Source of the DNA: Macrostomum lignano
Taxonomy: Eukaryota
Direction of reading: 5' to 3'
Length of the DNA stretch: 64,000 nt
Assembly (NCBI GenBank): GCA_002269645.1
Contig: NIVC01000392.1
Location: 124,001-188,000 of the forward strand
How positions within the stretch are numbered: the first letter of the stretch is position 1; the number at the start of each line of letters is the position of its first letter. A program made the position numbers and the translations under genes. Shown in pieces: positions 1,756-63,041 of the stretch. The notes under the pieces are model-generated. The model did not search any database. It was given only the letters and a program-made list of their open reading frames with translations, and had not been told where the DNA came from.

Positions 1756-1771
1756 CTTAATCTAAGGTTCC

Positions 1772-29439: not shown

Positions 29440-32400
29440 TTATTTTGCTTTCTTCTTGGTAGCGACATCTTCTTCTAGGAGAGTTCTCAGATCGGCCAGA
29501 GCCTTCACGATGGTTCCGCCGAAACGCTTTGAGTCCTGCGAGATAGATTAGCAATCCATTTTATTCTAACTCAACTATATATGATTGGCTAGATTAGCAA
29601 TCCATTCTATTCCAATTCATGTATATATGATTGGCTAGATTAGCAATCCATTCTATTCCAATTCATGTATATATGATTGGCTAGATTAGCAATCCATTCT
29701 ATTCCAAGTTATCTATATATTATAGGCTAGATTAGCAATCCATTTATTCCAATTTATCTATATATGATTGGCTAGACTAGCAATCCATTCCATTCGATAT
29801 TTAAGCAGCAAAAGCTACACGAACCGTCTTGTCGCAGCTGACGCGACTGCTGACGTGAAAGAAGACGGTGTTCTCCCCAGCAATGATGTAGGACACACCA
29901 TAGCCGTCCTGAGACACGGGCCCGAAGCCGCCGCCAGCGCTCAAAAAGTCGGGATGCTTCTCCAAGTCCAGCACGTTAGTCTGTCCGTGCGGAGTCTGCG
30001 AGGTGGACAGCTTCCACTGGCAGTGCAGCGCCTTCTCCAGGAAAGGCGACTGGGTCTTGCAGTACTTGGACACCACGTACAGGGTAAACAGGTGCCGGTC
30101 CACGCCTTTGCCAGTCATGGCGTCCCGGTACATTGTCTGGTGCTTCTCCGAGGCTTGCCGGAGCAGGCGGACAACTTCCTCATTCTGGAAAAAAACAGCG
30201 ATTGGGTTAGGCGGGGTCACGTGACCTCTGCTGGGCCGGATTGGTTGAACGATACGAACCCCTATTGGATAAATAAGACGCGGTCACGTGACCTCTGCTG
30301 GGCCGGACTGTTATGGCCCACCCTATCAAATCATTTATAAATTTTAGGCGGAGCTCTATTAAGCTTGCACGATCAAAAGTACCTTGTCTTGATCGAGGAG
30401 AAAAAATGCACACTTTTTATATTGCTGCCTTTTTATTCGATACCCCTTTTCGTATTTCAGAGCCAGTGAATAATGTGTCAGTAGTGTAATTAGATTTTTG
30501 CACTAATTAAATTTAGAAAACATTTTCCTTTACTTACTTCTGTAAGTAGTGTAATTAGATTGTCTCCCTAATTAAATTTAGACAACATTTTGCTTTACTT
30601 TCTTCTGTAAGTAGTGTAATTCGTTTTTTCTCACTAATTTAAATAATTTGAATTCAAGGTTACATTTTACTTTACTTTTTACTGTCAGTAATGTAATTCG
30701 ATTACTAACTAATTAAGTTTAGGCTACATTTTACTTTACTTTCTTCTGTCAGCAGTGTAATTAGATTTTCTTACTAATTGACTTTAGGCTGCATTTTAAT
30801 TCCCTCTCTACAGTCAGTAGTGTAATTAGATTCACACTAATTAAGTTTAGGCTACATTTTACTGTACTTTCTACTGTCAGTAGCCTATCGAGAACCAGTT
30901 GCACAGCGCCGCAGGTGAAACTCACGCTAGCGCCGCTTTCCATAGCGCGAACAAACGCGCACGACTCGTTGGTGCAGGACCGGACGGTCTCCGTGCGGCC
31001 CTCCTTGAACAGCCGGGTCATGGAGGCCTCGTAGGTCAGGCAGAACTCGCCGCCGCTGTCCCTGAAGTACGCCAGCTGCAGGGCCAGCTGGATGAACGCG
31101 TCGGGGCTCATCGAGCAGCGCTTCATGGCGCCTTTGCCGAACTGCCGGTGGACGACCAGGTGAAGGTCGACGTCGTTCAGCAGGTCGGTGGCAACCCGAA
31201 GCTGGCTGGCAATGACGGAGCGACAGGCGTCGTTGAGGTCCCACTGCAGGCGGATGGGGTTGGGCACGTTGTTGCGCGTCTGACCGCGGCAGTGACCGTT
31301 GGACCGGTAGCTGTGGGAGCGCAGCAATTCAATGATGATGCTGATTGATAAGATTCAAAGTACGAGGGCTACTTTTAGATAAGTTTCGAATGTTGAAAAA
31401 GTTTTGCAAATCATTTTCGGTAAGCTGACAAAATATCGAGCTTGTGAAAGCGACCGCAGTTCAATGGTTATTCATAGGATTTTTATGTGGGGGGACAAAG
31501 CCAAGAACTCAGCATATACTCGTACATGTACATGACTAAACTCCTACATGTCTAGTATTTTAAGAATCGGTGTTGTCAGCGCTCATTTTGGCGCCGCAGG
31601 CACTCATTTTGGCGCCTCAGGGATTCCTTTTGGCGCCGCAGGCACTCATTTTGGCGCCTCAGGGATTCCTTTTGGCGCCGCAGGCACTCATTTTGGCGCC
31701 TCAGGGATTCCTTTTAGCACCGCAGGCACTTATTTTAGCGCCGCAGGCACTCATTTTAGCACCACAGGCACTCATTTTAGCACCGCAGGCACTCATTTTA
31801 GCACCGCAGGCACTCATTTTAGCACCGCAGGCACTCATTTTGGCGCTCTGAAGAAAAATTATTGATTACCACCACAACGGGTCACAAGGTGGGGGGGGGG
31901 AAACACTGGTATGTACCCCATATCATGTCCTCCGTAGCCTGATTCATATAATTAGCTAGATTAGCAAATCTTTAATACCATCATTTATAGAATTGGCTAG
32001 ATTAGCAATCTATTCAATTCCATCCATATGATTGGCTTTTATATTTATTAGAGTCAGGAGTCTGTGTGCACCCTGGCGCACTTTAAGCGACACTGTCACA
32101 CAACCGGCGAGAGGCATTGCTGCCCATTCCGCCGACTCCCCTGAGCAGGCACACAAGCGCGCGGATACGTGCGCAGTCAGACGCACAGGCACACACTCAC
32201 ACAGGAGTGTACAGCGGCCCTGACTTTATTTATCGTTAGGCATGTACACTTCACTGTGCCTTGGGGCTTGGCCCTCAAGACTGTTAATGCACGATCAGAG
32301 CCAAGCCTCAAATTAATGTGACTGCACTTGGAATCGAGCTTGGGCCGCTGGCACATCAGAGCGCCGCGCCAGACCACCATCGACAGTCTTGGCTGCCTTG

Positions 32401-35400
32401 AAACGCAGACTGCTCGCTGAGAATGTCTATGGCCAAGAGACCATTGATACTGCACTCGCGGCCATAGACAACAAAGTCAAATCTGTCACTTGTGATTTGT
32501 CGAATTGTCAGCTAATAAAAAAACAGAACTCCGGAAAAAAATTAAAAAATCCTTACCAATCTTCGACAATATCGTAGTTGAACACAACGGCTTCCCACAT
32601 CTGCGACATCACGGGAGCGTCGGCCCTGAACAGTGAAGGGTAAACCACGTGACACTATACTAGTGATATAAAATGATGAAATTAATTTAAATTATTGGAC
32701 TAAATAAAAGCCAACTTACCAGCTGTGCTCGCAGTTGACGCCAACCTGGAAAGATAATAAGAAAACAAATCTATTATTTTATCAGTTTTTAATCAATTTT
32801 AAAAACACGACACTTCTAAGAAAAGCAATTATTTGAAAAGAAACAATTATAATACGAGCTCGTAGAAAATTAGGACCGCAGCGCATGCTTTGGCGATTGT
32901 CTATGGCCAAAATCGTGTATAGGGAGAGCATTGAATTTAAGACACGGCCAACCATATTCAGCCCATGCTTTGGCGATTGTCTATGGCCAAAACCGTGTAT
33001 GGGGAGAGCATTGAATTTAAGACACGGCCAACCATATTCAGCCCATGCTTTGGCGATTGTCTATGGCCAAAACCGTGTATGGGGAGAGCATTGAATTTAA
33101 GACACGGCTAACCATATTCAGCGCATGCTTTGGCGATTGTCTATGGCCAAAATCGTGTATGGGGAGAGCATTGAATTTAAGACACGGCTAACCATATTCA
33201 GCGCATGCTTTGGCGATTGTCTATGGCCAAAACCGTGTATGGGGAGAGCATGGAATTTAAGACACGGCTAACCATATTCAGCGCATGCTTTGGCGATTGT
33301 CTATGGCCAAAATCGTGTATGGGGAGAGCATTGAATTTAAGACACGGCCAACCATATTCAGCGCATGCTTTGGCGATTGTCTATGGCCAAAACCGTGTAT
33401 AGGGAGAGCATTGAATTTAAGACACGGCCAACCATATTCAGCGCATGCTTTGGCGATTGTCTATGGCCAAAATCGTGTATGGGGAGAGCATTGAATTTAA
33501 GACACGGCTAACCATATTCAGCGCATGCTTTGGCGATTGTCTATGGCCAAAATCGTGTATAGGGAGAGCATTGAATTTAAGACACGGCCAACCATATTCA
33601 GCGCATGCTTTGGCGATTGTCTATGGCCAAAATCGTGTATGGGGAGAGCATTGAATTTAAGACACGGCCAACCATATTCAGCGCATGCTTTGGCGATTGT
33701 CTATGGCCAAAATCGTGTATGGGGAGAGCATTGAATTTAAGACACGGCCAACCATATTCAGCGCATGCTTTGGCGATTGTCTATGGCCAAAACCGTGTAT
33801 GGGGAGAGCATTGAATTTAAGACACGGCTAACCATATTCAGCGCATGCTTTGGCGATTGTCTATGGCCAAAATCGTGTATGGGGAGAGCATTGAATTTAA
33901 GACACGGCTAACCATATTCAGCGCATGCTTTGGCGATTGTCTATGGCCAAAACCGTGTATGGGGAGAGCATGGAATTTAAGACACGGCTAACCATATTCA
34001 GCGCATGCTTTGGCGATTGTCTATGGCCAAAATCGTGTATGGGGAGAGCATTGAATTTAAGACACGGCCAACCATATTCAGCGCATGCTTTGGCGATTGT
34101 CTATGGCCAAAACCGTGTATAGGGAGAGCATTGAATTTAAGACACGGCCAACCATATTCAGCGCATGCTTTGGCGATTGTCTATGGCCAAAATCGTGTAT
34201 GGGGAGAGCATTGAATTTAAGACACGGCTAACCATATTCAGCGCATGCTTTGGCGATTGTCTATGGCCAAAATCGTGTATAGGGAGAGCATTGAATTTAA
34301 GACACGGCCAACCATATTCAGCGCATGCTTTGGCGATTGTCTATGGCCAAAATCGTGTATGGGGAGAGCATTGAATTTAAGACACGGCCAACCATATTCA
34401 GCGCATGCTTTGGCGATTGTCTATGGCCAAAATCGTGTATGGGAGAGCATTGAATTTAAGACACGGCCAACCATATTCAGCGCATGCTTTGGCGATTGTC
34501 TATGGCCAAAACCGTGTATAGGGAGAGCATTGAATTTAAGACACGGCCAACCATATTCAGCGCATGCTTTGGCGATTGTCTATGGCCAAAATCGTGTATG
34601 GGGAGAGCATTGAATTTAAGACACGGCCAACCATATTCAGCGCATGCTTTGGCGATTGTCTATGGCCAAAACCGTGTATAGGGAGAGCATTGAATTTAAG
34701 ACACGGCTAACCATATTCAGCGCATGCTTTGGCGATTGTCTATGGCCAAAATCGTGTATGGGAGAGCATTGAATTTAAGACACGGCCAACCATATTCAGC
34801 GCATGCTTTGGCGATTGTCTATGGCCAAAACCGTGTATAGGGAGAGCATTGAATTTAAGACACGGCCAACCATATTCAGCGCATGCTTTGGCGATTGTCT
34901 ATGGCCAAAACCGTGTATAGGGAGAGCATTGAATTTAAGACACGGCCAACCATATTCAGCGCATGCTTTGGCGATTGTCTATGGCCAAAACCGTGTATAG
35001 GGAGAGCATTGAATTTAAGACACGGCCAACCATATTCAGCGCATGCTTTGGCGATTGTCTATGGCCAAAACCGTGTATAGGGAGAGCATTGAATTTAAGA
35101 CACGGCTAACCATATTCAGCCCATGCTTTGGCGATTGTCTATGGCCAAAATCGTGTATGGGGAGAGCATTGAATTTAAGACACGGCTAACCATATTCAGC
35201 CCATGCTTTGGCGATTGTCTATGGCCAAAACCGTGTATGGGGAGAGCATTGAATTTAAGACACGGCTAACCATATTCAGCGCATGCTTTGGCGATTGTCT
35301 ATGGCCAAAACCGTGTATGGGGAGAGCATTGAATTTAAGACACGGCTAACCATATTCAGCGCATGCTTTGGCGATTGTCTATGGCCAAAACCGTGTATGG

Positions 35401-38400: not shown

Positions 38401-41400
38401 CTGGTCAGATGTGGGTCAAGGATAGGTCAGTAACAGCTGGTCAGATGTGGGTCAAGGATAGTTCAGTAACAGGTCAGATGTGGGTCAAGGATATGTCAGT
38501 AACAGCTGGTCAGATGTGGGTCAAGGATAGGTCAGAAACAGCTGGTCAGATGTGGGTCAATGATAGGTCAGAAACAGCTGGTCAGATGTGGGTCAAGGAT
38601 AGGTCAGTAACAGCTGGTCAGATGTGGGTCAAGGATAGGTCAGTAACAGCTGGTCAGATGTGGGTCAAGGATAGGTCAGTAACAGCTGGTCAGATGTGGG
38701 TCAAGGATAGGTCAGTAACAGCTGGTCAGATGTGGGTCAAGGATAGGTCAGTAACAGCTGGTCAGATGTGGGTCAAGGATAGGTCAGTAACAGCTGGTCA
38801 GATGTGGGTCAAGGATAGGTCAGTAACAGCTGGTCAGATGTGGGTCAAGGATAGGTCAGTAACAGCTGGTCAGATGTGGGTCAAGGATAGGTCAGTAACA
38901 GCTGGTCAGATGTGGGTCAAGGATAGGTCAGTAACAGCTGGTCAGATGTGGGTCAAGGATAGGTCAGTAACAGCTGGTCAGATGTGGGTCAAGGATATGT
39001 CAGTAACAGCTGGTCAGATGTGGGTCAAGGATAGGTCAGTAACAGCTGGTCAGATGTGGGTCAATGATAGGTCAGAAACAGCTGGTCAGATGTGGGTCAA
39101 GGATAGGTCAGTAACAGCTGGTCAGATGTGGGTCAAGGATAGGTCAGTAACAGCTGGTCAGATGTGGGTCAAGGATAGGTCAGTAACAGCTGGTCAGATG
39201 TGGGTCAAGGATAGGTCAGTAACAGCTGGTCAGATGTGGGTCAAGGATAGGTCAGTAACAGCTGGTCAGATGTGGGTCAAGGATAGGTCAGTAACAGCTG
39301 GTCAGATGTGGGTCAAGGATATGTCAGTAACAGCTGGTCAGTTGTGGGTCAAGGATAGGTCAGTAACAGCTGGTCAGATGTGGGTCAAGGATAGGTCAGT
39401 AATGAACCCAACTTGGTAACTAAGCGCTTACCCGTCCATTGGCGAACACGATCAGCGAGAAGGACTTGTCGAACCAGCGGTTCCGCCCGTTGCCATGCAA
39501 CAGGCTCTTGGCGAAGTGGTCCAGCTTCGAGTCGTCCTTGGGATCGTAGTCGGCCTCTTCATCGTCCAGCACAAGGACGAACGCCGCCCGCTCCACAGCG
39601 TCCAGACTGGTCTTGTTGACGCCTCGCCTAAAGAAGTCTTTGCGGGCTCGAGCCCAGACCTTCCGCTCGCCTGCCGTTAGGGCCGCCAGCTCCGCCTCGC
39701 CTGGCGCAGGCGGCGACTTGTCGTCAACGATGCGCTGGAACTGCGCCTCCAGCTCGCACGGCTCCAGCCAGCGGTTGCCGTAGTGGAAGTACACCTTGTA
39801 GAATCGGCCAGAGTGGAACACGGCAATGTGCCGCGTGTCGTTCAGGTGCATCAGGTAGTCGCGCTCCTCGCCTTTGGGTCGATGAGAAATTAGCGTGGGT
39901 TAGTGGAGGGTTACTGGCGACAAGATCAAAGAGCCGGTAAGTTCAAGTTAAGCGGTAATATCAAATGAGGCCGCATGATCAAAGACGGCGGTAAGATAAA
40001 AGAGAACGGTAATATAAAAGGAGGTGGTAAGATCAAAGACGGCGGTAAGATAAAAGAGAACGGTAATATAAAAGGAGGTGGTAAGATCAAAGACGGCGGT
40101 AAGATAAAAGAGAACGGTAATATTAAAGGTGGTAAGATCAAAGACGGCGGTAAGATAAAAGAGAACGGTAATATTAAAGGAGGTGGTAAGATCAAAGACG
40201 GCGGTAAGATAAAAGAGAACGGTAATATTAAAGGAGGTGGTAAGATCAAAGACGGCGGTAAGATAAAAGAGAACGGTAATATTAAAGGAGGTGGTAAGAT
40301 CAAAGACGGCGGTAAGATAAAAGAGAACGGTAATATTAAAGGAGGTGGTAAGATCAAAGACGGCGGTAAGATAAAAGAGAACGGTAATATTAAAGGAGGT
40401 GGTAAGATCAAAGACGGCGGTAAGATAAAAGAGAACGGTAATATTAAAGGTAGTAAGATCAAAGACGGCGGTAAGATGAAATGAAGCAGCATCTGTCACG
40501 CCATTGCTGTTGCTTACCCACCAACCCCCTTTTGAGAGGCTGTATATACTATCTTAAATCTGCTAAATAAATTTTATCAGTTCGGGCAGAGGCTATGAAA
40601 TTCTTCTCCAAACTTGTCGGTGATTAAAACGAAAAATAATACACCCTCTGGCTTTATGCTGAAGAAAACTTTAATCCTGCATACGGATTTCGTCCATAGC
40701 GACCTTTTAACGTTCACATCAACCAGGGCGTTGTGAATAGCCACCCCACCACCCTATCCCTGTTCGAGACAAAACCCCGTAGGATGATCATGTTAACCAG
40801 GGCGCATCCACTGCTTCACTGAGGGCTTGATCTTTACCGGCTGCTCTGGGGCGGGTATTGCCTGCCATCTTCCACTAACGAGGATAAGATGCTCTTTCAG
40901 GAAAGTCTGCACCTGGGTGAGAACACCTCGGTTTTCCAAGCCGAAATCTGCGCTATTGAGCAGTGCGCCCAGCACCTGATCCCGGCGAACATTAAGAAAT
41001 TCAATATTTATGTTTAAACTGATAGCTAAGTCGCTATCAAAGCCTTAATCGCGGAAAAAATTTCCACTGCAACTGTGTCTCAATGCTCTGTGCAATCTCT
41101 CTCAGTCCTTAACAGGATTAGAATTACCTGGACAATCGGTCACAGCAATATCCTGGGCAATGAGCTCGCAAATTCTCTCGCCAAGCTGACAGCAGCAACC
41201 CATACGGCAACCACCGTCTGATGAGGCTACCCATTCCTAGGTCCCAAGTCACCCGCCAAAGAAACAAGTAGCTTCGGTAAGATTAAAGGAGGCGGTAAGA
41301 TCAAAGGAGGCGGTAAGAGCAAAGGAAGCGGTAAGATCAAAGGAGGCGGTAATATTAAAGGAGGCGGTAATATCAAAGGAGGCGGTGAAGATCAAAGGAG

Positions 41401-43247: not shown

Positions 43248-44214
43248 GATTCGTCATGAAGATAAACAATTTCTGTGTGTTTATAATTGATAATTAAACA
43301 ATTGCTATTGTGTTCATCATTGAATATGAAACAACTGCTATTGTTATTATCATTGAATATTAAACAATTGCTATTGTTATTATCATTGAATATTAAAGTG
43401 ATTACTGATTACAAACTCATAAACACAATCAATACACTCATTATGAGTCGATAAGCACAACCGATAAACTATAAATAAATTATGTGATAAACACAACTGA
43501 TAAACACATTATGAGGTGATAAACACAACTGATAAAGTCATTATGATGTGATAAACACAACCATTAAACTACTTATGATTTGATAAACACAATTGATACT
43601 CTAATTTAGGTCACAAACACAAATCTACTCATTGGGTCATAAGCAGATTCAGTCATAAATACATTCCTTATGCTTAATACACTAATACACCTAGTATACT
43701 TAATACACCTAATTTTAATCAGACTTAAAAATAAAATAATGAAATCAATTAGCATTATTTATGTCCAACAGAATTGTCTCCGCAAAAAAGCAAAACATGT
43801 ATGATTCGTGTTCTTTCTTAATCTAAGAATCAATGTAAAATGCTACAATTGTACAACAGAACCCTATAAACAGAGCCAATGCAGAAGACAACGGCAAAAA
43901 CAGGATAAATTAAATATTAATTAAAAATCAAAGGGTTTGTCAATAATTATTGTAAATCGCTTATAAAAAAAAGTAGTTCGCAATAAAACGCCAATAAAAT
44001 TTTAAAAAACAAGATAGAAAAAAGTTTATATGATGCGGTAATTTAGGCAACTTTAGTCATTAGAACTATAATGTTTTAGGCCCTTAAATGCAACTAGCTC
44101 GTAAAACCGATGGTGTCAATTAAGACAATAAAACGCTATATCTCACAATTTCAATAAAAGATAAAATTATGGACTGGAGTGTATTTACTAATGCCTAGCT
44201 ATTGCACAGAAACT

Positions 44215-50200: not shown

Positions 50201-53200
50201 GATGGAATAGAATGGATTGCTAATCTAGCCAACCATATAAATAATGGAATAGAATGGATTGCTAATCTAGCCAACCATATTAATAATGAAATAGAATTAA
50301 TTGCTAATCTAACCAACCATATGAATGATGGAATTGAATGGATTCCTAATCTAGCCAACCATATAAATGATGGAATAGAATGGATTGCTAATCTAGTCAA
50401 AAGTATGAATGATGAAAATCTAACCAACCATATGAATGATGGAATAGAATGGATTGCTAATCTAGCCAACCATATAAATGATGGAATAGAATGGATTGCT
50501 AATCTAGCCAACCATATAAATAATTGAATAGAATGGATTGCTAATCTAGCCAACCATATAAATGATGGAATAGAATGGACTGCTAATCTAACCAACCATA
50601 TAAATGATGGAATAGAATGGACTGCTAATCTAGCCAACCATATAAATAATAGAATAGAATGGACTGCTAATCTAACCAACCATATAAATGATGGAATAGA
50701 ATGGATTGCTAATCTAACCAACCATATAAATAATGGAATAGAATGGATTGCTAATCTAGCCAACCATACAAATGATGGAATAGAATGGACTGCTAATCTA
50801 ACCAACCATATAAATGATGGAATAGAATGGATTGCTAACCTAGCCAACCATATAAACGATGGAACAGAATGGATTGCTAATCTAGACAATCATATGAATA
50901 ATGAATTAGAATGAACTGCTAATCTAACCAACCATATAAATGATGGAATTGAATGGATTGCTAATCTAGCCAACCATATAAATAATGGAATAGAATGGAT
51001 TGCTAATCTAGTCAATCATATAAATGATGGAATATAATGGATTGCTAATCTAGCCAACCATATAAACGATGGAACAGAATGGATTGCTAATCAAGGCAAT
51101 CATATGAATAATGAATTAGAATGGACTGCTATTCTAGCCAACCATATAAATGATGGAATAGAATGGACTGCTAATCTAACCAACCATATAAATGATGGAA
51201 TAGAATGGATTGCTAATCTAGCCAACCATATAAATAATGGAATAGAATGGATTGCTAATCTAGCCAACCATATAATAATGAAATAGAATTAATTGCTAAT
51301 CTAACCAACCATATGAATGATGGAATTGAATGGATTCCTAATCTAGCCAACCATATAAATGATGGAATAGAATGGATTGCTAATCTAGTCAAAAGTATGA
51401 ATGATGAAAATCTAACCAACCATATGAATGATGGAATAGAATGGATTGCTAATCTAGCCAACCATATAAATGATGGAATAGAATGGATTGCTAACCTAGC
51501 CAAACATATAAACGATAGAATAGAATGGATCGCTAATCTAGCCAACCATATGAGTGATGGAATTAAATGGATTCCTAATCTAGTCAATCATATGAATGAT
51601 GGAATTAAATGGATTGCTAATCTAACCAACCATATTAATGATGAAATAGAATGGACTGCTAATCTAACCAACCATATAAATGATGGAATAGAATGGATTG
51701 CTAATCTAGCCAACCATATAAACGATGGAACAGAATGGATTGCTAATCTAGCCAATCATATAAATGATGGAATAGAATGGATTGCTAATCTAACCAACCA
51801 TATGAATGATGGAATAGAATGGATTGCTAATCTAACCAACCATATGAATGATGGAATAGAATGGATTGCTAATCTAACTAACCATATGAATGATGGAATA
51901 GAATGGATTGCTAATCTAACCAACCATATGAATGATGGAATAGAATGGATTGCTAATCTAACCAACCATAGAATGATGGAATAGAATGGATTGCTAATCT
52001 AACCAACCATATGAATGATGGAATAGAATGGATTGCTAATCTAACCAACCATATGAATGATGGAATAGAATGGATTGCTAATCTAGCCAACCATATGAAT
52101 GATGGAATAGAATGGATTGCTAATCTAACCAACCATATGAATGATGGAATAGAATGGATTGCTAATCTAACCAACCATATGAATGATGGAATAGAATGGA
52201 TTGCTAATCTAACCAACCATATGAATGATGGAATAGAATGGATTGCTAATCTAACCAACCATATGAATGATGGAATAGAATGGATTGCTAATCTAACCAA
52301 CCATAGGAATGATGGAATAGAATGGATTGCTAATCTAACCAACCATAGAATGATGGAATAGAATGGATTGCTAATCTAACCAACCATATGAATGATGGAA
52401 TAGAATGGATTGCTAATCTAGCCAACCATATGAATGATGGAATAGAATGGATTGCTAATCTAACCAACCATATGAATGATGGAATAGAATGGATTGCTAA
52501 TCTAACCAACCATATGAATGATGGAATAGAATGGATTGCTAATCTAACCAACCATATGAATGATGGAATAGAATGGATTGCTAATCTAACCAACCATATG
52601 AATGATGGAATAGAATGGATTGCTAATCTAACCAACCATAGGAATGATGGAATAGAATGGATTGCTAATCTAACCAACCATATGAATGATGGAATAGAAT
52701 GGATTGCTAATCTAACCAACCATATGAATGATGGAATAGAATGGATTGCTAATCTAACCAACCATAGGAATGATGGAATAGAATGGATTGCTAATCTAAC
52801 CAACCATATGAATGATGGAATAGAATGGATTGCTAATCTAACCAACCATATGAATGATGGAATAGAATGGATTGCTAATCTAACCAACCATAGAATGATG
52901 GAATAGAATGGATTGCTAATCTAACCAACCATAGGAATGATGGAATAGAATGGATTGCTAATCTAACCAACCATATGAATGATGGAATAGAATGGATTGC
53001 TAATCTAACCAACCATATGAATGATGGAATAGAATGGATTGCTAATCTAACCAACCATATGAATGATGGAATAGAATGGATTGCTAATCTAACCAACCAT
53101 ATGAATGATGGAATAGAATGGATTGCTAATCTAACCAACCATAGGAATGATGGAATAGAATGGATTGCTAATCTAACCAACCATATGAATGATGGAATAG

Positions 53201-53857
53201 AATGGATTGCTAATCTAACCAACCATATGAATGATGGAATAGAATGGATTGCTAATCTAACCAACCATAGGAATGATGGAATAGAATGGATTGCTAATCT
53301 AACCAACCATATGAATGATGGAATAGAATGGATTGCTAATCTAACCAACCATAGAATGATGGAATAGAATGGATTGCTAATCTAACCAACCATAGGAATG
53401 ATGGAATAGAATGGATTGCTAATCTAACCAACCATATGAATGATGGAATAGAATGGATTGCTAATCTAACCAACCATATGAATGATGGAATAGAATGGAT
53501 TGCTAATCTAACCAACCATAGGAATGATGGAATAGAATGGACTGCTAATCTAACCAACCATATGAATGATGGAATAGAATGGATTGCTAATCTAACCAAC
53601 CATAGGAATGATGGAATAGAATGGACTGCTAATCTAACCAACCATAGGAATGATGGAATAGAATGGATTGCTAATCTAACCAACCATATAAATGATGGAA
53701 TAGAATGGACTGCTAATCTAACCAACCATAGGAATGATGGAATAGAATGGATTGCTAATCTAACCAACCATAGGAATGATGGAATAGAATGGACTGCTAA
53801 TCTAACCAACCATAGGAATGATGGAATAGAATGGATTGCTAATCTAACCAACCATAT
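44215..53857. repeat. 42-bp satellite array (~9.6 kb) between the CPT1 paralogs, with higher-order structure
   Basis: Unit AATCTAACCAACCATATGAATGATGGAATAGAATGGATTGCT. Confidence 0.98.
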
Positions 53858-54194
53858 GGATTTTCATTCATGTTATGCATTGAAAAATCAGTACATGTTC
53901 AAACGGAATAGCAAAGCAAGGTACTGGAAACGCAAGTCTGAACAGCAGGTCATAAAATATTAGTAGACTATCTGCATGGATATAATTGTGTTATATTTCT
54001 CGAATTCAGCTTCCAGTTTAAGTACAAACTTAACGGGATAATGTTACAGTATAACGTAGCAATAAATCAAAAAAATATTGCACAGATATTGACAGAATAT
54101 TGCACCAATGTAATAAACTACTCATATAATTATTTAGTTATATTCAACTCATAATAGGCAGGGTTCGCAAAGCAAAATCGACCTCAGACAGCAG

Positions 54195-57100
54195 TCAAAA
54201 CAGATTTTTCACATCCAGCAGAGCCCGGCAGATCTGCTCGCCGAACCGACGGGAGTCCTGCAAAATGATTGATTAGTGCATTAGCTAGGAACAGTGTGTG
54301 CACTGCAACATCAGGATCGCTTGACTGAGATTCGGGAGATTTCGGGATTTAGGAACTAGGAATGCAATTTAGGGATCGCACAATCTTGAAATTTAGCATA
54401 CGAGCGCGTAAGATTTTAGGAACTGAGAATCTGGGATCTGGGATCTGACATCTGGGAGCTGGGATCTGACATCTGGGAGCTGGGATCTCAAGAACTAGGA
54501 TCTGGAGTCTGAGGACCCATGACATAAGGACTAGGGAACTAAGGATCTGAGAATCTGGGATCTGGGATCTGACATCTGACATCTGGGAGCTGGGATCTGA
54601 CATCTGGGAGCTGGGATCTGACATCTGGGTGCTGGGATCTGACATCTGGGAGCTGGGATCTGACATCTGGGTGCTGGGATCTGACATCTGGGAGCTGGGA
54701 TCTGACATCTGGGAGCTGGGATCTGACATCTGGGAGCTGGGATCTCAAGAACTAGGATCTGGAGTCTGAGGACCCATGACCTAAGGACTAGGGAACTAAG
54801 GATCTGAGATCTGAGGATCTGGGATCTGAGGATCTGGGATCTGAGGATCTGGGATCTGAGGATCTGGGATCTGAGGATCTGGGATCTGAGGATCTGGGGA
54901 TCTGGGATCTGAGGATCTGGGATCTGAGGATCTGGGATCTGAGGATCTTGGATCTGGGATCTGAGGATCTTGGATCTGGGATATGACATCTGAGGATATG
55001 ACATCTGAGGATCTGACATCTGAGGATCTGACATCTGAGGATCTGACATCTGAGGATCTCGGATCTGAGGATCTCGGATCTGAGGATCTCGGATCTGAGG
55101 ATCTCGGATCTGAGGATCTCGGATCTGACATCTGAGGATCTGGGATCTGAGGATCTGGGATCTGAGGATCTGGGATCTGGGATCTGGGATCTGAGGATCT
55201 GGGATCTGAGGATCTGAGGATCTGGGATCTGAGGATCTGGGATCTGAGGATCTGGGATCTGAGGATCTGAGGATCTGGGATCTGAGGATCTGGGATCTGG
55301 GATCTGAGGATCTGGGATCTGAGGATCTGGGATCTGAGGATCTCGGATCTGAGGATCTGACATCTGAGGATCTGGGATCTGAGGATCTAACATCTGAGGA
55401 TTTAAGGCACAGCAAAAGCTACACGAACCGTTTTATCCGAGCTGACGCGGCTGCTAACATGGAAGAAGACGGTGTCCTCCCCAGCAATGATGTAGGACAC
55501 ACCGTAACCGTCGTGAGACACGGGCCCGAAGCCGCCACCGGCGCTCAAGAAATCCGGATTCTTGTGCAAATCCATTTTGCTAGTCTGTCCGTGCGGAGTC
55601 TGCGAGGTGGACAGCTTCCACTGGCAGTGCAGCGCCTTCTCCAGGAAAGGCGACTGGGTCTTGCAGTACTTGGACACCACGTACAGGGTGAACAGGTGCC
55701 GGTCCACGCCTTTGCCAGTCATGGCGTCCCGGTACATTGTCTGGTGCTTCTCCGAGGCTTGCCGGAGCAGGCGGACAACTTCCTCATTCTGGAAAAAAAG
55801 AGACAGTTTGAGTAAGTAAAGAGCCAATTTAAATTAACCGATAGGCCGCCACTTGCACTAGCTTAGTCTCGTAAGGAGAGATTGGAGTGTAGTTATAGCT
55901 AGAGTTGGATTAAAGTTTGGGCTTTAGACCTTAACGGAAACAGTTCGTTATAATAACAAAATAAATTCCGATACAAAGCTTTGATTTTTCTCTGGCAACA
56001 ATAGCCTCTTCTTCTAGTCTTTTGTCGGCTGTTTTACTTGCCCTATTATTTAGCTAATTGCTGAACTGTAGGAATTGCAATAGGTATTTATTAAGTGACT
56101 CTCGTTTACTGACTTTTAGGTGGCAAAGGCGGTGCAAAAACTTCCCTGCAGCTATTAATCTTTAACTACTTTTCTTCTCGCTATGATCTGCTGCATCAAT
56201 AGGGTGCATTATAATCTTGTATAGCTTACAGATTCACCAATTCATTAATCTTACAGATTCACCAATTCATTAATCTTACAGATTCACCAATTCATTAATC
56301 TTACAGATTCACCAATTCATTAATCTTACAGATTCACCAATTCATTAATCTTACAGATTCACCAATTCATTAATCTTACAGATTCACCAATTCATTAATC
56401 TTACAGATTCACCAATTCATCAATCTTACAGATTCACCAATTCATTAATCTTACAGATTCACCAATTCATCAATCTTACAGATTCACCAATTCATTAATC
56501 TTACAGATTCACCAATTCATCAATCTTACAGATTCACCAATTCATCAATCTTACAGATTCACCAATTCATTAATCTTACAGATTCACCAATTCATCAATC
56601 TTACAGATTCACCAATTCATTAATCTTACAGATTCACCAATTCATTAATCTTACAGATTCACCAATTCACCAATCTTACAGATTCACCAATTCATTAATC
56701 TTACAGATTCACCAATTCATCAATCTTACAGATTCACCAATTCATTAATCTTACAGATTCACCAATTCATCAATCTTACAGATTCACCAATTCATCAATC
56801 TTACAGATTCACCAATTCATCAATCTTACAGATTCACCAATTCATCAATCTTACAGATTCACCAATTCATCAATCTTACAGATTCACCAATTCATCAATC
56901 TTACACATTCACCAATTCATCAATCTTACAGATTCACCAATTCATTAATCTTACAGATTCACCAATTCACCAATCTTACAGATTCACCAATTCATTAATC
57001 TTACAGATTCACCAATTCATTAATCTTACAGATTCACCAATTCATCAATCTTACAGATTCACCAATTCATCAATCTTACAGATTCACCAATTCATTAATC

Positions 57101-60100
57101 TTACAGATTCACCAATTCACCAATCTTACAGATTCACCAATTCATCAATCTTACAGATTCACCAATCACCAATCTTACAGATTCACCAATTCATCAATCT
57201 TACAGATTCACCAATTCATTAATCTTACAGATTCACCAATTCATTAATCTTACAGATTCACCAATTCATTAATCTTACAGATTAACCAATTCATTAATCT
57301 TACAGATTCACCAATTCATTAATCTTACAGATTCACCAATTCATTAATCCTACAGATTCACCAATTCATTAATCTTACAGATTCACCAATTCATTAATCT
57401 TACAGATTCACCAATTCATTAATCTTACAGATTCACCAATTCATTAATCCTACAGATTCACCAATTCATTAATCTTACAGATTCACCAATTCATCAATCT
57501 TACAGATTCACCAATTCATTAATCTTACAGATTCACCAATTCAATAATCTTACAGATTCACCAATTCATTAATCCTACAGATTCACCAATTCACCAATCT
57601 TTCAGATTTATGAATTCACAAATCCCATAGATTTTTGCCTACTGAATAAAAACATCAAACTTAGGGCAGTCTACGAGTCTACGATTATCCAACTAATGGA
57701 AATCTTAAATTCCAAAGCACCTGAATTATGATTAGTCATTATTACCTAAGAGGATTAAAGATTAAACACAATCAGACAGATAAAAGTCATCTTACACGCC
57801 GGCACTTATCGAAATTACCAAAGTGACAACTAACAGACATAGCTAAATACCGATATTGGATGGATGTCCCCTAATTAAAGAGTACTAACAAAACAAAAAT
57901 CTTACTTACAAAATGAAAACATAGTTTACATATTATCGTCCGGACAATACCTTTCACGTCTACTATGAGTAGAATGAATATAAAATGACTAGTAATATAT
58001 AGTTTAGGTCGGTTATTTTTTCTTTTAACTCTTAGTGTTCTACTTGACTAATAAAGTACACATTTAAAATATAATACTTTCAAATACTTAACTACTATTC
58101 ATATAAGTATAATCACTATTTGTTTCAATTGAATCTAGTGTCTACTGGAATTTCAAATTTCTTGCTAATCAAAATAAAGCTACATTTTGACTGTACTTTT
58201 TTCTGTCAGTAGTGTAATTGTAGTTAGATTTTATTAATAATTAAATTTGAACTTAACTTTCTACTGTCAGTAGTGTAATTAGTTTTTTCTCACTAATTTA
58301 AATAATTTAAATTAAGGCTACATTTTACTTTACTTATTACTGTCAGTAGTGTAATTCGATTACTAACTAATTAAGTCTAGGCTACATTTTACTGTACTTT
58401 CTACTGTCAGTAGCCTATCGAGAACCAGTTGCACAGCGCCGCAGGTGAAACTCACGCTAGCGCCGCTTTCCATAGCGCGAACAAACGCGCACGACTCGTT
58501 GGTGCAGGACCGGACGGTCTCCGTGCGGCCCTCCTTGAACAGCCGGGTCATGGAGGCCTCGTATGTCAGGCAGAACTCGCCGCCGCTGTCCCTGAAGTAC
58601 GCCAGCTGCAGGGCCAGCTGGATGAACGCGTCGGGGCTCATCGAGCAGCGCTTCATGGCGCCTTTGCCGAACTGCCGGTGGACGACCAGGTGAAGGTCGA
58701 CGTCGTTCAGCAGGTCGGTGGCAACGCGAAGCTGGCTGGCGATGACGGAGCGACAGGCGTCGTTGAGGTCCCACTGGAGGCGGATGGGGTTGGGCACGGG
58801 GCCTTTCGGTGTGCCCTTGCAATGACCCGTCGCAGTGTATCTAAAAGCATAAAAATATTCAAGTAGACATGTCAACTAAAATATTTGCTGAAAAATTAAC
58901 GAGCTACTTTAAGTACAAATGTGAGGATTTTTGTAGAAATTTAGTCCTAAGCGGGTAAATGAAATTATGGAATTACCCAGTGTCTGGCACAATGTCATAG
59001 GTGATGACAGCCTCTTCCCACAATTGCGACATTACTGGAGCATCGGCCCTAAAGTAGTAAGGTAAGCTTTTTTATTATCACTAAAATTTCCGTAAAATAA
59101 ATAGCAATAAAATACAACTTTTATATTAAACTTACCAACTGTGTTCTGCGTTGACGCCAATCTGTAACCAGTTAGATAGATGAGCGTAAGATTCACTTGA
59201 TATTATAAATAAAAATTTAAAAAATTATAAATAGACATTTTTACAATACTGTTAATTGTGTCTCGTCAAACCGGTTACCTAGTAGTAGTAGCTAGTAGTT
59301 AGTAGCTAGCTAGCATAGGCCACTTCCGGTCAGAACTACTATTCGTAGGTATCATCAGGGGCCACTTCTGGTCTGAACTGCTATTCATAGGGATTATCAA
59401 GACCACTTCCGGTCTGAACTTTTATCCATAGTGATTATCAGGAGCCACTTCCGGTCTGAATTGTTATCCAAATAGATTATCAGGGGCCACTTCCAGTCTT
59501 AACTGTTATCCATAGGGATTATCATAAGCCACCTACAGTCTGAACTGCTATTTCCTACGAAATCATTTCCGGTCAGGAGAATAATAACTAATGACACTCA
59601 AAATACGCATAATTTCAGCTTAGCTCACCCGTCCATTGGCGAACACGATCAGCGAGAAGGACTTGTCGAACCAGCGGTTCCGCCCGTTGCCATGCAACAG
59701 GCTCTTGGCGAAGTGGTCCAGCTTCGAGTCGTCCTTGGGATCGTAGTCGGCCTCTTCATCGTCCAGTACAAGGACGAACGCCGCCCGCTCCACAGCGTCC
59801 AGACTGGTCTTGTTGACGCCTCGCCTAAAGAAGTCTTTGCGGGCTCGAGCCCAGACCTTCCGCTCGCCTGCCGTCAGGGCCGCCAGCTCCGCCTCGCCTG
59901 GCGCAGGCGGCGACTTGTCGTCAACGATGCGCTGGAACTGCGCCTCCAGCTCGCACGGCTCCAGCCAGCGGTTGCCGTAGTGGAAATACACCTTGTAGAA
60001 TCGGCCAGAGTGGAACACGGCAATGTGCCGCGTGTCGTTCAGGTGCATCAGGTAGTCGCGCTCCTCGCCTGTTCAATTCATAGACAGGTTTATTTTTCAA

Positions 60101-63041
60101 ATTGACTGGCACTTTAAATCCAGATAATGAAACTTATCAAAACCTAACTTTTTTTAAAAAAGCGCCACTTCTAATCCTGAAGAATGACACTTTAAATTTT
60201 TATTGAAAAATGGCACTTTAAATCTTGAAAAATGGCACTTTAAATCTTGAAAAATGGCACTTTTAACCTTGAAAATGGTGCTTTTAATCTTGAAAAATGG
60301 CACTTTCAATCTTGAAAAATGGCACTTTTAATCTTGAAAAATGGCACTTTTAATTTTGAAAAATGGCACTTTTAATTTTGAAAAATGGCACTTTTAATCT
60401 TGAAAAATGGCACTTTCAATCTTGAAAAAGGGCACTTTTAATATTTATTTAAAAATGGCACTTTCAATCTTGAAAAATGGCACTTTCAATCTTGAAAAAT
60501 GGCACTTTCAATCTTGAAAAATGGCACTTTCAATCTTGAAAAATGGCACTTTTAATTTTGAAAAATGGCACTTTTAATCTTGAAAAATGGCACTTTCAAT
60601 CTTGAAAAAGGGCACTTTTAATCTTTATTTAAAAATGGCACTTTAAATCTTGAAAAATGGCACTTTTAACCTTGAAAATGGTGCTTTTAATCTTGAAAAA
60701 TGGCACTTTTAACCTTGAAAATGGCACTTTTAATCTTGAAAAATGGCGGTTTTAATCTTGAAAAAGAACTGGCTCACCTGGTATCCTAGTAGTGGCAAAC
60801 TGTCTCTCATACTGCCAGCTACACAGCGGCACCGTGTCATTCAGTAGAATCGGCGGCATCTCCTCCCGGCAGATGCGGCGCCAGAACTGCAGCATCGCCC
60901 AGGACACGTTTGCCGCCCTGGCAGCTTGAATCCGGGTTGGCCTGACGAATATCGCGTCCACTGCGTAATAGTTGGAGTTCACCATGATTGGGTCGCGGCT
61001 GTACAAGTAGACAAATTCTTCCCACCAATCGCTGACGTAGTTCGGAGCCCACCAGGATTTCAGGCGCAAATAGAATTGCAACTTCCTGGCAATGCCCGTG
61101 CTCTGCGGGTGTTGGTATAAACACCTCTATCTATCTACTTCTGTAGCTACCTTTAGCTACCTGTGTAGCTACCTCTATCTACTTCTGTAGCTACCTCTAG
61201 CTACCTGTGTAGCTACCTCTAGCTACCTGTGTAGCTACCTCTAGCTACCTGTGTAGCTACCTCTAGCTACCTGTGTAGCTACCTCTAGCTACCTGTGTAG
61301 CTACCTCTAGCTACCTGTGTAGCTACCTCCTTCCACCTGTGTAGCTACCTCTATCTACCTGTGCAGCTACCTCTATCTATCTGTGTAGCTACCTCAATCT
61401 ACCTGTGCAGCTACCTCCACCTGTGTAGCTACCTCTCTCTATCTACCTGTGTAGCTACCTCTCTCTATCTACCTGTGTAGCTACCTCTAGCTACCTGTGT
61501 AGCTACCTCTTATCTACCTGTGTAGCTACCTCTTATCTACCTGTGTAGCTACCTCTTATCTATCTGTGTAGCTACCTTTATCTACCTGTGTAGCTACCTC
61601 TATCTACCTGTGTAGCTACCTCTATCTACCTGTGCAGCTACCTCTATCTACCTGTGCAGCTACTTCTATCTACCTGTGCAGCTACCTCTATCTACCTGTG
61701 CAGCTACCTCTATCTACCTGTGCAGCTACCTCTATCTACCTGTGCAGCTACCTCTATCTACCTGTGCAGCTACCTCTATCTACCTGTGCAGCTACCTCTA
61801 TCTACTCGAGTAGGTTATGTACCCTTGTAGTAGCTACCTGTATCTGCTTGAGTAGTTACAATCTTGTACCCCCGTATTAGCTACCTATATATACTCTACC
61901 TACTTCTAAAGCTAACTCAGCCTATTTTGTGTCGCCTCATTTTACCTTTGTCCACCTCACCGCACTATCCGCTATTGTAGCCTGACTCACTCGGCCAAGA
62001 TTAAGAAAACCCACCTGAAATTCGGCAGCCAACCGTCGCATTTCAAGCATTTCCTCGTCGCCAAGCAGCGACTCCATGGAGACCAGATACCGGCGCACCG
62101 TGTCGCCAACGGACGGCAGCGGCAGACGGGGCAGCGAGTTTTGAAACGAAAACAAACCCGGCCGACGATTTCTTAACAGAGTTTTGGCCAGAACCGCCCA
62201 CACTTTGGTCGGTCGCGACACCCGACCTCGGGCTTCGTACATCCAACCGTGATAGGCTAGCATCTGGCCAATCAGCAGCTTATAGATCAGCACTACTAGT
62301 AGCCACAGTATGCAGGCTATTAGCGCGCAGGAGGCGTACGTGTCGTGAGGCGGCACCACGCCTAAGTAGCTGCATAGGGGTATCAAAAGGATTAAATACA
62401 AAACTATGAATAGGATTAGTGATGAAAGGTGCATGGAGTGCCAAGGTGGGAGACAGAGAAATAGGCTTGAGAAGGGCTGAGAGATGGAGGTAAGAGTAGT
62501 GTGGGAGGAGACAGAGAAGTAGGGTTGGGAAAGGCTAGGAGAGGGAGAGATAGTAGAGTGGAAGGGGGAGGCAGAGTAGGGTGAGAAAGTCTGACAGAGG
62601 GAAGTAGAAGTGGAGTGGGGGAGGGAAACAAAGTAGGGTTAGAGAGGCAGGGAAAAGACGTTACACCGAGACTACAAAGAGGCTTCATGATAGGCTCAGA
62701 GCATCCGCAGTAGAGAACTCTTAGTACAGAGAGTAAATAATGTGTAAACTGTTTGCCACTCACCGCACAAGCAACGGGTTGAGCTGTTTCACATAGCCAA
62801 ATGATAGATCGTTGCCAAACATAGTGGCAAAGATCATCACTAACATCATTGTTAGCAGGCTGCTCGGCTTAGCAGGATAAATTCCATTGCGCAGTCGGTT
62901 TTTAAACCTGGCGTACCACTTTTTATAGGCTCGAACTCCGGAAGCCCAGACGCGTAGCAGGGCGTCGTGATCGAATTCAAATTCGACGCCCTGGTCGGTG
63001 ATATTAAAAGCGAACACTACAGCTTGATGGGCCTCGGCCAT
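54195..63041 (-). CDS. CPT1: Carnitine O-palmitoyltransferase 1, paralog B, 767 aa; exons 63041-62764, 62369-62015, 61102-60778, 60068-59629, 59161-59136, 59048-58977, 58840-58456, 55788-55429, 54257-54195
   Basis: [10 protein letters not shown] start, two TM segments, [22 protein letters not shown], catalytic [18 protein letters not shown] and KLSTSQTP. Nine GT-AG exons join in frame (2304 nt). Confidence 0.95.
54430..55400. repeat. GATCT-based short-unit repeat (GATCTGAG/GATCTGG/GATCTGAC) filling CPT1-B intron 8
   Basis: Read directly; includes a duplicated block containing CTCAAGAACTAGGATCTGGAGTCTGAGGACCCATGAC. Confidence 0.95.
56225..57600. repeat. 25-bp minisatellite (TTACAGATTCACCAATTCATTAATC), ~55 copies, CPT1-B intron 7
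   Basis: Read directly. Confidence 0.97.
59318..59575. repeat. ~42-bp degenerate repeat (CCACTTCCGGTCTGAACT...) in CPT1-B intron 4
   Basis: ~6 copies at ~42-bp spacing. Confidence 0.85.
60110..60760. repeat. 22-bp minisatellite (AAAAATGGCACTTTTAATCTTG) filling CPT1-B intron 3
   Basis: Read directly. Confidence 0.95.
61125..61805. repeat. ~22-bp minisatellite (TAGCTACCTCTATCTACCTGTG) in CPT1-B intron 2
   Basis: Read directly. Confidence 0.94.

What the first reader, a model, noticed from the sequence alone, without database searches (positions are those of the whole stretch)
29440..63041. Tandem CPT1 paralogs are a patchwork: homogenised catalytic exons, diverged regulatory and membrane parts
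Seen: exon 4 (440 nt) differs at only 3 positions by my count, all synonymous, and identity stops at both splice sites. Exon 7 differs for its first ~45 nt ([14 protein letters not shown] vs [14 protein letters not shown]), then has ~4 synonymous differences, with identity running on into intron 7. Exon 8 is near-identical up to TPHGQT and then diverges. Exons 1-3, both micro-exons and exon 9 are heavily diverged. Both copies keep E3/H5, the catalytic His, the YEASM Met and STS. Established: the N-terminus and TMs govern malonyl-CoA sensitivity and targeting. Inference: an ancient duplication with recurrent gene conversion of the catalytic core while the regulatory modules specialise.
Basis: partly seen in the sequence, partly recalled or inferred. 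Interest (0 to 1): 0.7.

Follow-up and report, generated by a model that had tools for sequence, protein, structure and literature searches.

The report
Gene-conversion mosaic in tandem flatworm CPT1 genes
Two neighbouring, anciently duplicated carnitine palmitoyltransferase-1 genes of the flatworm Macrostomum lignano have kept three stretches almost identical by copying DNA from one gene to the other, while the rest has diverged beyond recognition; this is a clean example of a well-known process.

Summary
The window is Macrostomum lignano (assembly Mlig_3_7). Two intact nine-exon CPT1 genes lie head-to-tail on the minus strand: B at 63041-54195 and A at 43247-29440.

Exon 4 (440 nt) differs at 3 synonymous sites, and identity ends at both splice sites. 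A second tract runs from codon 14 of exon 7 to 78 nt into intron 7. A third covers the first 208 nt of exon 8.

In these tracts A-B dS is 0.03-0.04, the same as between the three subgenome copies of the locus. Elsewhere A-B dS is 0.7 to above 2. The same exons are saturated against two other CPT1 paralogs (B versus C, exon 4: dS 1.6), so silent-site constraint does not explain it.

The mosaic recurs in all three subgenome copies. Protein models from an independent assembly show it at the amino-acid level.

Interlocus gene conversion between old tandem paralogs is well supported. The label "catalytic core versus regulatory modules" is only roughly right, because the catalytic His lies on an unconverted micro-exon. 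Specialisation is untested.

This is a new example of a known phenomenon, of modest interest. In passing: intron positions differ strikingly among the four paralogs.

The parts
54195..63041 (-). CPT1 paralog B (9 coding exons, 767 aa). It is the upstream gene of the tandem pair.
   Evidence: 100% tblastn match to UniRef A0A1I8H8H2 (P0002) apart from two model errors. GT-AG model. The exon 2 donor at 62015 is supported by NCBI PAA83981.1 and UniRef A0A1I8ID19. Pfam CPT_N + Carn_acyltransf.
29440..43247 (-). CPT1 paralog A (9 coding exons, 776 aa). It is the downstream gene.
   Evidence: Exact spliced match to NCBI PAA83980.1 / BOX15_Mlig017169g2 (P0001). Pfam CPT_N + Carn_acyltransf.
39432..39871 (-). 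Conversion tract 1, A copy: the whole of exon 4 (440 nt).
   Evidence: 3 synonymous differences from B; dS 0.03, dN 0. Identity ends at both splice sites in all three subgenome copies.
59629..60068 (-). Conversion tract 1, B copy: the whole of exon 4.
   Evidence: B versus C dS in this exon is 1.63.
30848..31268 (-). Conversion tract 2a, A copy: exon 7 from codon 14 to its end, plus the first 78 nt of intron 7. Weaker homology continues through a 65-nt tandem repeat to about 30661.
   Evidence: 4 synonymous differences in 343 exon nt. The 78 intron nt are identical in all six copies.
58378..58798 (-). Conversion tract 2a, B copy.
29977..30184 (-). Conversion tract 2b, A copy: first 208 nt of exon 8 (through TPHGQT).
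   Evidence: 1 difference in 208 nt. The upstream intron is not homologous beyond the polypyrimidine tract.
55581..55788 (-). Conversion tract 2b, B copy.
29806..29976 (-). Zone of intermediate divergence, A copy: exon 8b plus the first 19 nt of intron 8 (unusual GTTCGT donor, identical in A and B).
   Evidence: 83% identity over exon 8b. With exon 9, dS is 0.69 against 1.42 for B-C. Read as an older conversion.
55410..55580 (-). Zone of intermediate divergence, B copy.
41590..43247 (-). Unconverted 5' half of A (exons 1-3: N-terminal regulatory peptide, TM1, TM2, start of the acyltransferase domain). Introns at CDS 507 and 807.
   Evidence: 59% nt identity to B; dS 2.4, dN 0.40. Intron positions.
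60778..63041 (-). Unconverted 5' half of B (exons 1-3). Introns at CDS 278 and 633.
32557..32745 (-). Unconverted micro-exons 5 (26 nt, carries the catalytic His) and 6 (69 nt) of A.
   Evidence: dS 1.3 and 3.3 against B. His472 lies in exon 5.
58977..59161 (-). Unconverted micro-exons 5 (26 nt) and 6 (72 nt) of B.
44222..53857 (.). 42-bp satellite array (about 232 copies) that fills most of the 10.9-kb spacer between B and A.
   Evidence: Tandem Repeats Finder.

Best explanation
A and B are old tandem CPT1 paralogs of Macrostomum lignano. Both are intact and under purifying selection. Non-reciprocal homologous repair (interlocus gene conversion) has repeatedly copied sequence between them across the three longest blocks of uninterrupted homology.

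Those blocks are exon 4, the 3' 343 nt of exon 7 with the start of intron 7, and the 5' 208 nt of exon 8. In them the pair is as similar as the three subgenome copies of each gene are to one another.

Everything else has escaped conversion and is saturated at silent sites. That covers the N-terminal peptide, both TM segments, the start of the catalytic domain, the two micro-exons, two surface loops and the C-terminal tail.

Shown: the mosaic, its statistical significance, its absence in other paralog pairs, and its presence in three subgenomes.

Inferred:
- Conversion has been ongoing rather than a single event.
- Tracts stop where homology stops (non-homologous, minisatellite-filled introns; hypervariable loops).
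- The diverged N-terminal/TM module gives A different regulation or targeting.
For: 1. dS by partition. A-B is 2.41 (exons 1-3), 0.03 (exon 4), 1.91 (exons 5, 6, 7a), 0.04 (exon 7b-8a) and 0.69 (exon 8b-9). For B-C, B-D, A-C, A-D and C-D every partition is 0.8-2.3. Copies of one gene in different subgenomes give 0.00-0.11.

2. Permutation: 0 of 20000 shuffles reach the observed identical run, for all sites and for third positions.

3. Segment trees. A and B copies are reciprocally monophyletic with long branches in the unconverted partitions. They are intermingled, within 0.005-0.01, in exon 4 and exon 7b-8a.

4. Among the six exon-4 copies there are 12 variable sites and none is a fixed A/B difference. 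Mean A x B difference is 4.7, against a mean within-gene difference of 5.0.

5. The same boundaries occur in contigs C392, C890 and C1332. These correspond to the three subgenomes described in PMC10733133.

6. Protein models from the independent ML2 assembly show the same B-then-A tandem and the same shared exon 4, at the amino-acid level.

7. Identity runs 78 nt into intron 7, so the template was DNA there.

8. No third locus in the genome resembles the diverged exons of A.

9. All 12 CPT1 genes are intact. The unconverted part of A has pN/pS 0.07 among subgenome copies.
Against: - No reads were available. Mlig_3_7 was polished with Pilon using Illumina and RNA-seq reads (PMC5730564). Fine-scale SNP sharing among six near-identical exons could therefore be partly artefactual, and true A-B divergence in the tracts could be somewhat higher.
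- No orthologues from other Macrostomum species could be retrieved, so the classic test (converted exons group by species) was not run.
- The direction of transfer is undetermined.
- The order of the duplications is unresolved. Under LG+C20 the four paralogs form a polytomy, and an A+B clade is not rejected (p-AU 0.23).
- The GC3 rise in the tracts (0.84-0.88) is small relative to paralogs C and D (0.73-0.84). GC-biased conversion is not demonstrated.
Confidence: 0.85

Rival explanations
1. Assembly or polishing artefact. The near-identity of exons 4, 7b and 8a was created by collapse of reads, or by Pilon polishing with multi-mapped Illumina/RNA-seq reads. RNA-seq polishing would act on exons only.
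For: Mlig_3_7 was polished with Pilon using both Illumina shotgun and STAR-mapped RNA-seq reads (PMC5730564). About 36% of the assembly length lies in scaffolds that are chimeric between subgenomes (PMC10733133). The exon-precise limit of tract 1 is what exon-only polishing might mimic.
Against: - Polishing can only correct small differences. Reads from an exon about 25% diverged, as in B versus C, would not map.
- The flanking introns are not merely variant; they cannot be aligned.
- The six exon-4 copies still differ at 0-8 sites, so they were not flattened.
- Tract 2a runs 78 nt into an intron.
- Three contigs show the same mosaic, and ML2-assembly protein models show it at the amino-acid level.
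Confidence: 0.03
2. No conversion. Instead, strong constraint on the nucleotide sequence of these exons (splicing enhancers, RNA structure, codon bias) has frozen silent sites since an old duplication.
For: The tracts are GC3-rich (0.84-0.88) and encode highly conserved protein.
Against: The same exons are saturated at silent sites between B and C (dS 1.63 and 0.83), B and D (0.90 and 0.86) and C and D (0.94 and 0.90). Identity also extends into intron 7.
Confidence: 0.02
3. The reverse history. A is a recent duplicate of B, and its diverged parts (exons 1-3, 5, 6, 7a, 8b-9) were overwritten from a third, distant paralog.
For: By symmetry, a mosaic alone cannot say which class of segment is the converted one.
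Against: - A six-frame search of the whole 764-Mb assembly finds A-like exons 1-3 only in the three A copies. The next best matches are 44-52% identical.
- All introns except the start of intron 7 are non-homologous between A and B.
- Introns 1-2 are at different positions. That needs a long independent history for the whole gene bodies.
Confidence: 0.03
4. A variant of the main explanation. Exon 4 was converted through a spliced RNA/cDNA template (transcript-templated repair), and that is why the tract ends exactly at both splice sites.
For: Tract 1 coincides with exon 4 to the nucleotide in all three subgenomes.
Against: - A DNA template with non-homologous introns predicts the same limits.
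- The neighbouring exons 3 and 5, which would be contiguous on a cDNA, are not converted: there are 7 silent differences in the last 19 codons of exon 3, and a difference at the first base of exon 5.
- Tract 2a includes intron sequence.
Confidence: 0.06

Closest known systems
Mosaic divergence of tandem paralogs through interlocus gene conversion. Examples: HMA4 in Arabidopsis halleri (bioRxiv 10.1101/2025.10.29.685298), GOT1 paralogs in Tigriopus (PMC3728101), theory in PMC3924837. Classic cases from my own knowledge: gamma-globin, RHD/RHCE, red/green opsin.
   Same: Neighbouring paralogs carry blocks of near-identity, at the level of allelic divergence, interrupted by islands of high divergence. 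dS is heterogeneous along the gene. Segment trees are incongruent.
   Different: Here the unconverted parts are saturated (dS above 2) and cover most of the gene, so these are islands of conversion in a sea of divergence. One tract is exon-exact because the introns share nothing. The pattern is replicated in three subgenomes of a neopolyploid.
Animal CPT1 (carnitine O-palmitoyltransferase 1; vertebrate CPT1A/B/C).
   Same: CPT_N and Carn_acyltransf domains. E3/H5, the EHSWAD His, the YEASM Met and STS are present. About 50% identity to mollusc, annelid and vertebrate CPT1. The ancient 26-nt micro-exon and four other intron positions are shared with Capitella.
   Different: The four M. lignano paralogs form their own clade on a long stem and are not orthologues of vertebrate A/B/C. 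The TM segments of paralog A are weakly hydrophobic (Kyte-Doolittle 1.1-1.3, against 1.5-2.8 in B, C and D).

Membership tests
Interlocus (ectopic) gene conversion between paralogs | Paralogous tracts whose silent-site divergence is far below that of adjacent paralogous sequence, beyond chance. | tested here: met
   dS 0.03-0.04 against 0.7 to above 2. 0 of 20000 permutations reach the observed run.
Interlocus (ectopic) gene conversion between paralogs | The low divergence is specific to the interacting pair and is not an intrinsic constraint of the segment. | tested here: met
   The same exons give dS 0.83-1.63 for B-C, B-D and C-D.
Interlocus (ectopic) gene conversion between paralogs | Phylogenetic incongruence: converted segments group by genome or locus, and unconverted segments group by paralog. 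| tested here: met
   Tested within one genome only. A and B copies from three subgenomes intermingle in exon 4 and exon 7b-8a and are reciprocally monophyletic elsewhere. The between-species version is not testable with these tools.
Interlocus (ectopic) gene conversion between paralogs | Non-reciprocal transfer with an identifiable donor and acceptor. | tested here: inconclusive
   With outgroups the exon 4 tree is (D,(C,(A=B))), and the A=B branch is short, which hints at a B-type sequence. However, relationships among A-D are unresolved under a better model.
Interlocus (ectopic) gene conversion between paralogs | The pattern is real in the DNA and not an assembly product. | tested here: inconclusive
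   Three contigs and ML2-derived protein models agree.
CPT1 (outer-membrane carnitine palmitoyltransferase 1) | Carn_acyltransf catalytic domain with the catalytic His, plus the CPT1-specific N-terminal regulatory peptide. | tested here: met
   PF00755 (E 1e-182 and 1e-178) and PF16484 (E 3e-19 and 9e-17) in A and B respectively. His472/473, E3 and H5.
CPT1 (outer-membrane carnitine palmitoyltransferase 1) | Two transmembrane segments between the N-peptide and the catalytic domain. | tested here: inconclusive
   B, C and D have two hydrophobic 19-mers (Kyte-Doolittle 1.5-2.8). In A the corresponding peaks are only 1.14 and 1.31. No dedicated TM predictor was run.
CPT1 (outer-membrane carnitine palmitoyltransferase 1) | Malonyl-CoA-sensitive long-chain acyl transfer to carnitine. 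| not testable with these tools
   Needs an enzyme assay.

The most novel reading that the evidence does not exclude
The limits of conversion may be set by gene architecture rather than by protein function.

Paralog-specific intron turnover has cut the 5' half into homology blocks of at most 278 nt. Seven intron positions in alignment columns 175-351 are absent from Capitella, and five of them are unique to one paralog. This fragmentation may insulate the regulatory N-terminus and TM region from homogenisation.

The minisatellite arrays lie 30-135 nt from exon 4 on both sides in both genes. They may act as break-prone sites that keep feeding conversion of the long exons. If so, intron gain and minisatellite-rich introns would be a mechanism that lets part of a duplicated gene escape concerted evolution.
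Probability: 0.12. Interest if true: 0.6.

Novelty: new member of a known kind. Interest (0 to 1): 0.3.

Why it matters
This is a very clean, internally replicated case (three subgenomes) of partial concerted evolution. Two enzymes share nucleotide-identical segments of the catalytic domain but have N-terminal and membrane modules that are only about 45% identical at the protein level.

It matters in three ways:
- It is a caution for dating duplications and for orthology and Ks analyses in the neopolyploid M. lignano. Whole-gene Ks of this pair (0.56) matches neither of its two histories.
- It is a natural domain-swap pair for asking how the CPT1 N-terminus and TM segments set malonyl-CoA sensitivity and targeting.
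- It shows that short-read or RNA-seq quantification and RNAi against exons 4, 7 and 8 cannot tell the two genes apart.

It does not change what is known about gene conversion.

Tried and rejected
- Looked for orthologues in other Macrostomum species. The 5.8-billion-protein search returned only M. lignano sequences above 58% identity, so species-level exon trees could not be made.
- The look-up of encoding contigs returned no record for P0001 (an independent assembly or transcripts) or for P0007 (Lineus).
- An exact-match spliced model of P0004 failed on all three D contigs, because that protein comes from another assembly. A mismatch-tolerant search timed out. The D model was built by hand instead.
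- 'B is sister to C, so A-B is the older split' looked supported under LG+G and GTR+G (79-94%). It dissolved under LG+C20, and the AU test does not reject A+B (p 0.23). I dropped it as an argument.
- GC-biased conversion: GC3 is only slightly higher than in paralogs C and D. Not claimed.
- Introner-like origin of paralog-specific introns: intron 2 of C is single-copy apart from a dispersed repeat fragment of 100-190 nt inside it. Not supported.
- Literature searches found no report of gene conversion in CPT1 or in M. lignano.
Full report
IDENTITY OF THE REGION

A draft translation of the downstream gene found Macrostomum lignano proteins as the only close hits.
- NCBI PAA83980.1 (BOX15_Mlig017169g2, P0001) matches the downstream gene, here called A, exactly.
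- UniRef A0A1I8H8H2 (P0002) matches the upstream gene, here called B.

The window is contig C392:124001-188000 of a 764-Mb assembly with 5269 scaffolds. That fits Mlig_3_7 as described in PMC5730564 and PMC10733133.

Both genes are on the minus strand, with B 5' of A. They are separated by 10.9 kb, of which 9.6 kb is a 42-bp satellite.

GENE MODELS

A depth-first search for GT-AG models that reproduce the proteins gave nine coding exons for each gene (coordinates are in the parts section).

For B, the UniRef model retains 30 nt of intron 7 and uses a downstream donor for exon 2. The donor at 62015 (EFQ|STG) is the one used by NCBI PAA83981.1 and by UniRef A0A1I8ID19.

Both proteins carry CPT_N and Carn_acyltransf. 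Both have E3, H5, the EHSWAD His, the YEASM Met and STS.

Nei-Gojobori dS by exon of A:

| Exon | dS (A versus B) | Note |
|---|---|---|
| 1 | saturated | |
| 2 | 2.1 | |
| 3 | 0.90 | |
| 4 | 0.03 | 3 synonymous differences in 440 nt, dN 0 |
| 5 | 1.3 | |
| 6 | 3.3 | |
| 7 | 0.126 overall | 24 mismatches in the first 42 nt, then 4 synonymous ones |
| 8 | 0.23 overall | 1 difference in 208 nt, then 26 in 152 nt |
| 9 | 0.81 | |

Flanks:
- Around exon 4, only the ag and gt dinucleotides are shared with the introns.
- After exon 7, intron 7 is identical for 78 nt in all copies and then shares a 65-nt tandem repeat.
- Before exon 8, only the polypyrimidine tract is shared.
- After exon 8, the first 19 nt of intron 8 are identical, with an unusual GTTCGT donor.

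The longest identical run (206 nt overall, 68 third positions) was never reached in 20000 shuffles; the maxima were 82 and 39.

CONVERSION, NOT CONSTRAINT AND NOT ARTEFACT

The genome holds four CPT1 paralogs (A, B, C = P0003 type, D = P0004 type). Each is present three times, on different contigs, and all 12 are intact.

The triplication matches the three subgenomes (S, L1, L2) reported for this assembly, with about 2% SNP divergence (PMC10733133).

Partitioned dS:
- Every paralog pair is at 0.8-2.4 in every partition.
- The only exceptions are A-B in exon 4 (0.03) and in exon 7b-8a (0.04).
- Those values equal the divergence between subgenome copies of a single gene (0.00-0.11).
- B versus C in exon 4 is 1.63, so exon 4 has no intrinsic silent-site constraint.

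Segment trees agree. A and B are separate long-branched groups in exons 1-3, in exons 5-7a and in exons 8b-9. They are intermingled in the two low-dS partitions.

Among the six exon-4 copies, none of the 12 variable sites is a fixed A/B difference. One three-site haplotype is shared by A on C1332 and B on C890. The mean A x B difference (4.7) equals the mean within-gene difference (5.0). Tract 2 keeps three fixed differences, so it is slightly older or converted less often.

Exon 8b-9 has dS 0.69, half the B-C value, and A and B share the start of intron 8. I read this as an older conversion event. Together with the three separate tracts, this supports recurrence.

Why assembly error is unlikely:
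- The same limits are seen on three contigs.
- The six copies still differ from each other.
- Protein models from the ML2 assembly show the same B-then-A tandem, with a shared exon 4 at the amino-acid level.

One caveat remains. Mlig_3_7 was polished with Pilon using Illumina and RNA-seq reads. Single-SNP patterns among near-identical exons should therefore not be over-read.

The reverse history (A recent, with its diverged parts imported) fails for two reasons. No other locus resembles the diverged exons of A. The gene bodies also differ in introns throughout.

WHAT IS NOT ESTABLISHED

The four paralogs form a Macrostomum-specific clade on a long stem. Their branching order is unresolved.
- The B+C grouping seen with simple models disappears under LG+C20.
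- An A+B clade is not rejected (p-AU 0.23).

So 'ancient' rests on three things: silent-site saturation, unalignable introns and different intron positions. It does not rest on tree topology. The direction of transfer is also open.

The phrase 'catalytic core' is loose, for three reasons.
- The catalytic His lies on the unconverted 26-nt micro-exon.
- The unconverted exons 2-3 belong to the acyltransferase domain.
- The converted blocks are the longest stretches of uninterrupted homology (440, 343 plus intron, and 208 nt). A homology-length limit therefore explains the tract map as well as selection does.

On specialisation, only two things are shown.
- A is the fast-evolving copy in the N-terminal/TM part: dN is 0.40 to B, C and D, against 0.15 for B-C. 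That part is nonetheless under purifying selection now, with pN/pS 0.07 among subgenome copies.
- Its TM peaks are weaker than those of B, C and D.

The role of E3/H5, the N-peptide and the TM segments in malonyl-CoA sensitivity and targeting is established knowledge for mammalian CPT1A. I cite it from memory and did not test it here.

COMPARISON WITH WHAT IS KNOWN

Mosaic divergence of tandem paralogs under interlocus gene conversion is well described (bioRxiv 10.1101/2025.10.29.685298; PMC3728101; PMC3924837). No report for CPT1 or for M. lignano was found.

This is a new member of a known kind. It is unusually clean and is replicated in three subgenomes.

SIDE OBSERVATION

Intron positions differ among the paralogs.

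| Gene | Intron positions in the 5' half (alignment column/phase) |
|---|---|
| A | 175/0, 276/0, 325/1 |
| B | 93/2, 217/0, 325/1 |
| C | 93/2, 257/0, 351/0 |
| D | 93/2, 217/0, 307/0 |

Further downstream, 472/0, 480/2, 638/0 and 758/0 are shared by all four, and 504/2 is absent only from D.

Capitella teleta CPT1 shares only 93/2, 472/0, 480/2, 504/2 and 758/0. Seven positions in columns 175-351 are therefore candidate lineage-specific gains, and five of them are unique to one paralog.

Most of these introns consist largely of minisatellites. The intron 325/1 is shared only by A and B and forms the 5' edge of the converted exon 4.

One tested intron (intron 2 of C) is not a multi-copy element.

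Noticed in passing
window 41590-43247 and 60778-63041; loci L040/L041 (C2598), L047 (C1592), L048 (Capitella): Intron positions in the 5' half differ among the four M. lignano CPT1 paralogs. Seven positions in alignment columns 175-351 are absent from Capitella CPT1, and five of them are unique to one paralog. A has lost the ancient 93/2 intron. D has fused exons 6 and 7. This suggests unusually active intron turnover after the duplications.
   Followed up: partly
window 29544-29795, 30476-30883, 31582-31846, 32879-37879, 38194-39402, 39922-40481, 41275-41567, 41760-41939, 54419-55401, 56225-57608, 59318-59552, 60166-60765, 61130-61805: Most introns of both genes are built largely of a private minisatellite (units of 18-80 bp, up to 63 copies). 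Some arrays start within tens of bases of the splice sites. Array lengths differ between subgenome copies; intron 7 of B is 2.7, 3.0 and 5.7 kb.
   Followed up: partly
window 44222-53857: A 9.6-kb array of a 42-bp satellite (about 232 copies, AT-rich) fills the spacer between the two CPT1 genes. A related 46-bp repeat lies in intron 8 of A (29544-29795).
   Followed up: no
window 29806-29824 and 55410-55428: The first 19 nt of intron 8 (GTTCGTGTAGCTTTTGCTG, a non-consensus donor) are identical in A and B in all six copies, although the adjoining exon sequence is only 83% identical. This could be a splicing element or the trace of an older conversion.
   Followed up: no
window 54195-63041 (gene B): Public models of B are faulty. 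UniRef A0A1I8H8H2 retains 30 nt of intron 7 ([10 protein letters not shown]), uses a downstream exon 2 donor and lacks exon 9. NCBI PAA83981.1 goes out of frame at the exon 6/7 junction. ML2 models A0A1I8ID19 and A0A1I8I6L0 fuse B and A into one protein.
   Followed up: partly
G000 contigs C392, C890, C1332 (A+B); C2598, C67, C2871 (C); C1592, C356, C282 (D): M. lignano has four CPT1 paralogs in three subgenome copies each, giving 12 intact genes. They form a lineage-specific clade on a long stem relative to other spiralian CPT1s.
   Followed up: yes
window 724-1761, 21685-26233 (minus strand); 11433-12098 (plus strand): Upstream of the CPT1 pair there are 7TM/GPCR-like open frames. One is interrupted by a large minisatellite at 22-24 kb. 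There is also a transposase-like open frame. None was examined further.
   Followed up: no
L047 (C1592) intron 3 of paralog D: A tRNA-like sequence (GGGGCTGTAGCCTAGTGGTTAGAGCG...GGTTCGAATC) sits inside the D-specific intron, next to a 24-nt minisatellite. It is probably a SINE or a tRNA-derived insert.
   Followed up: no
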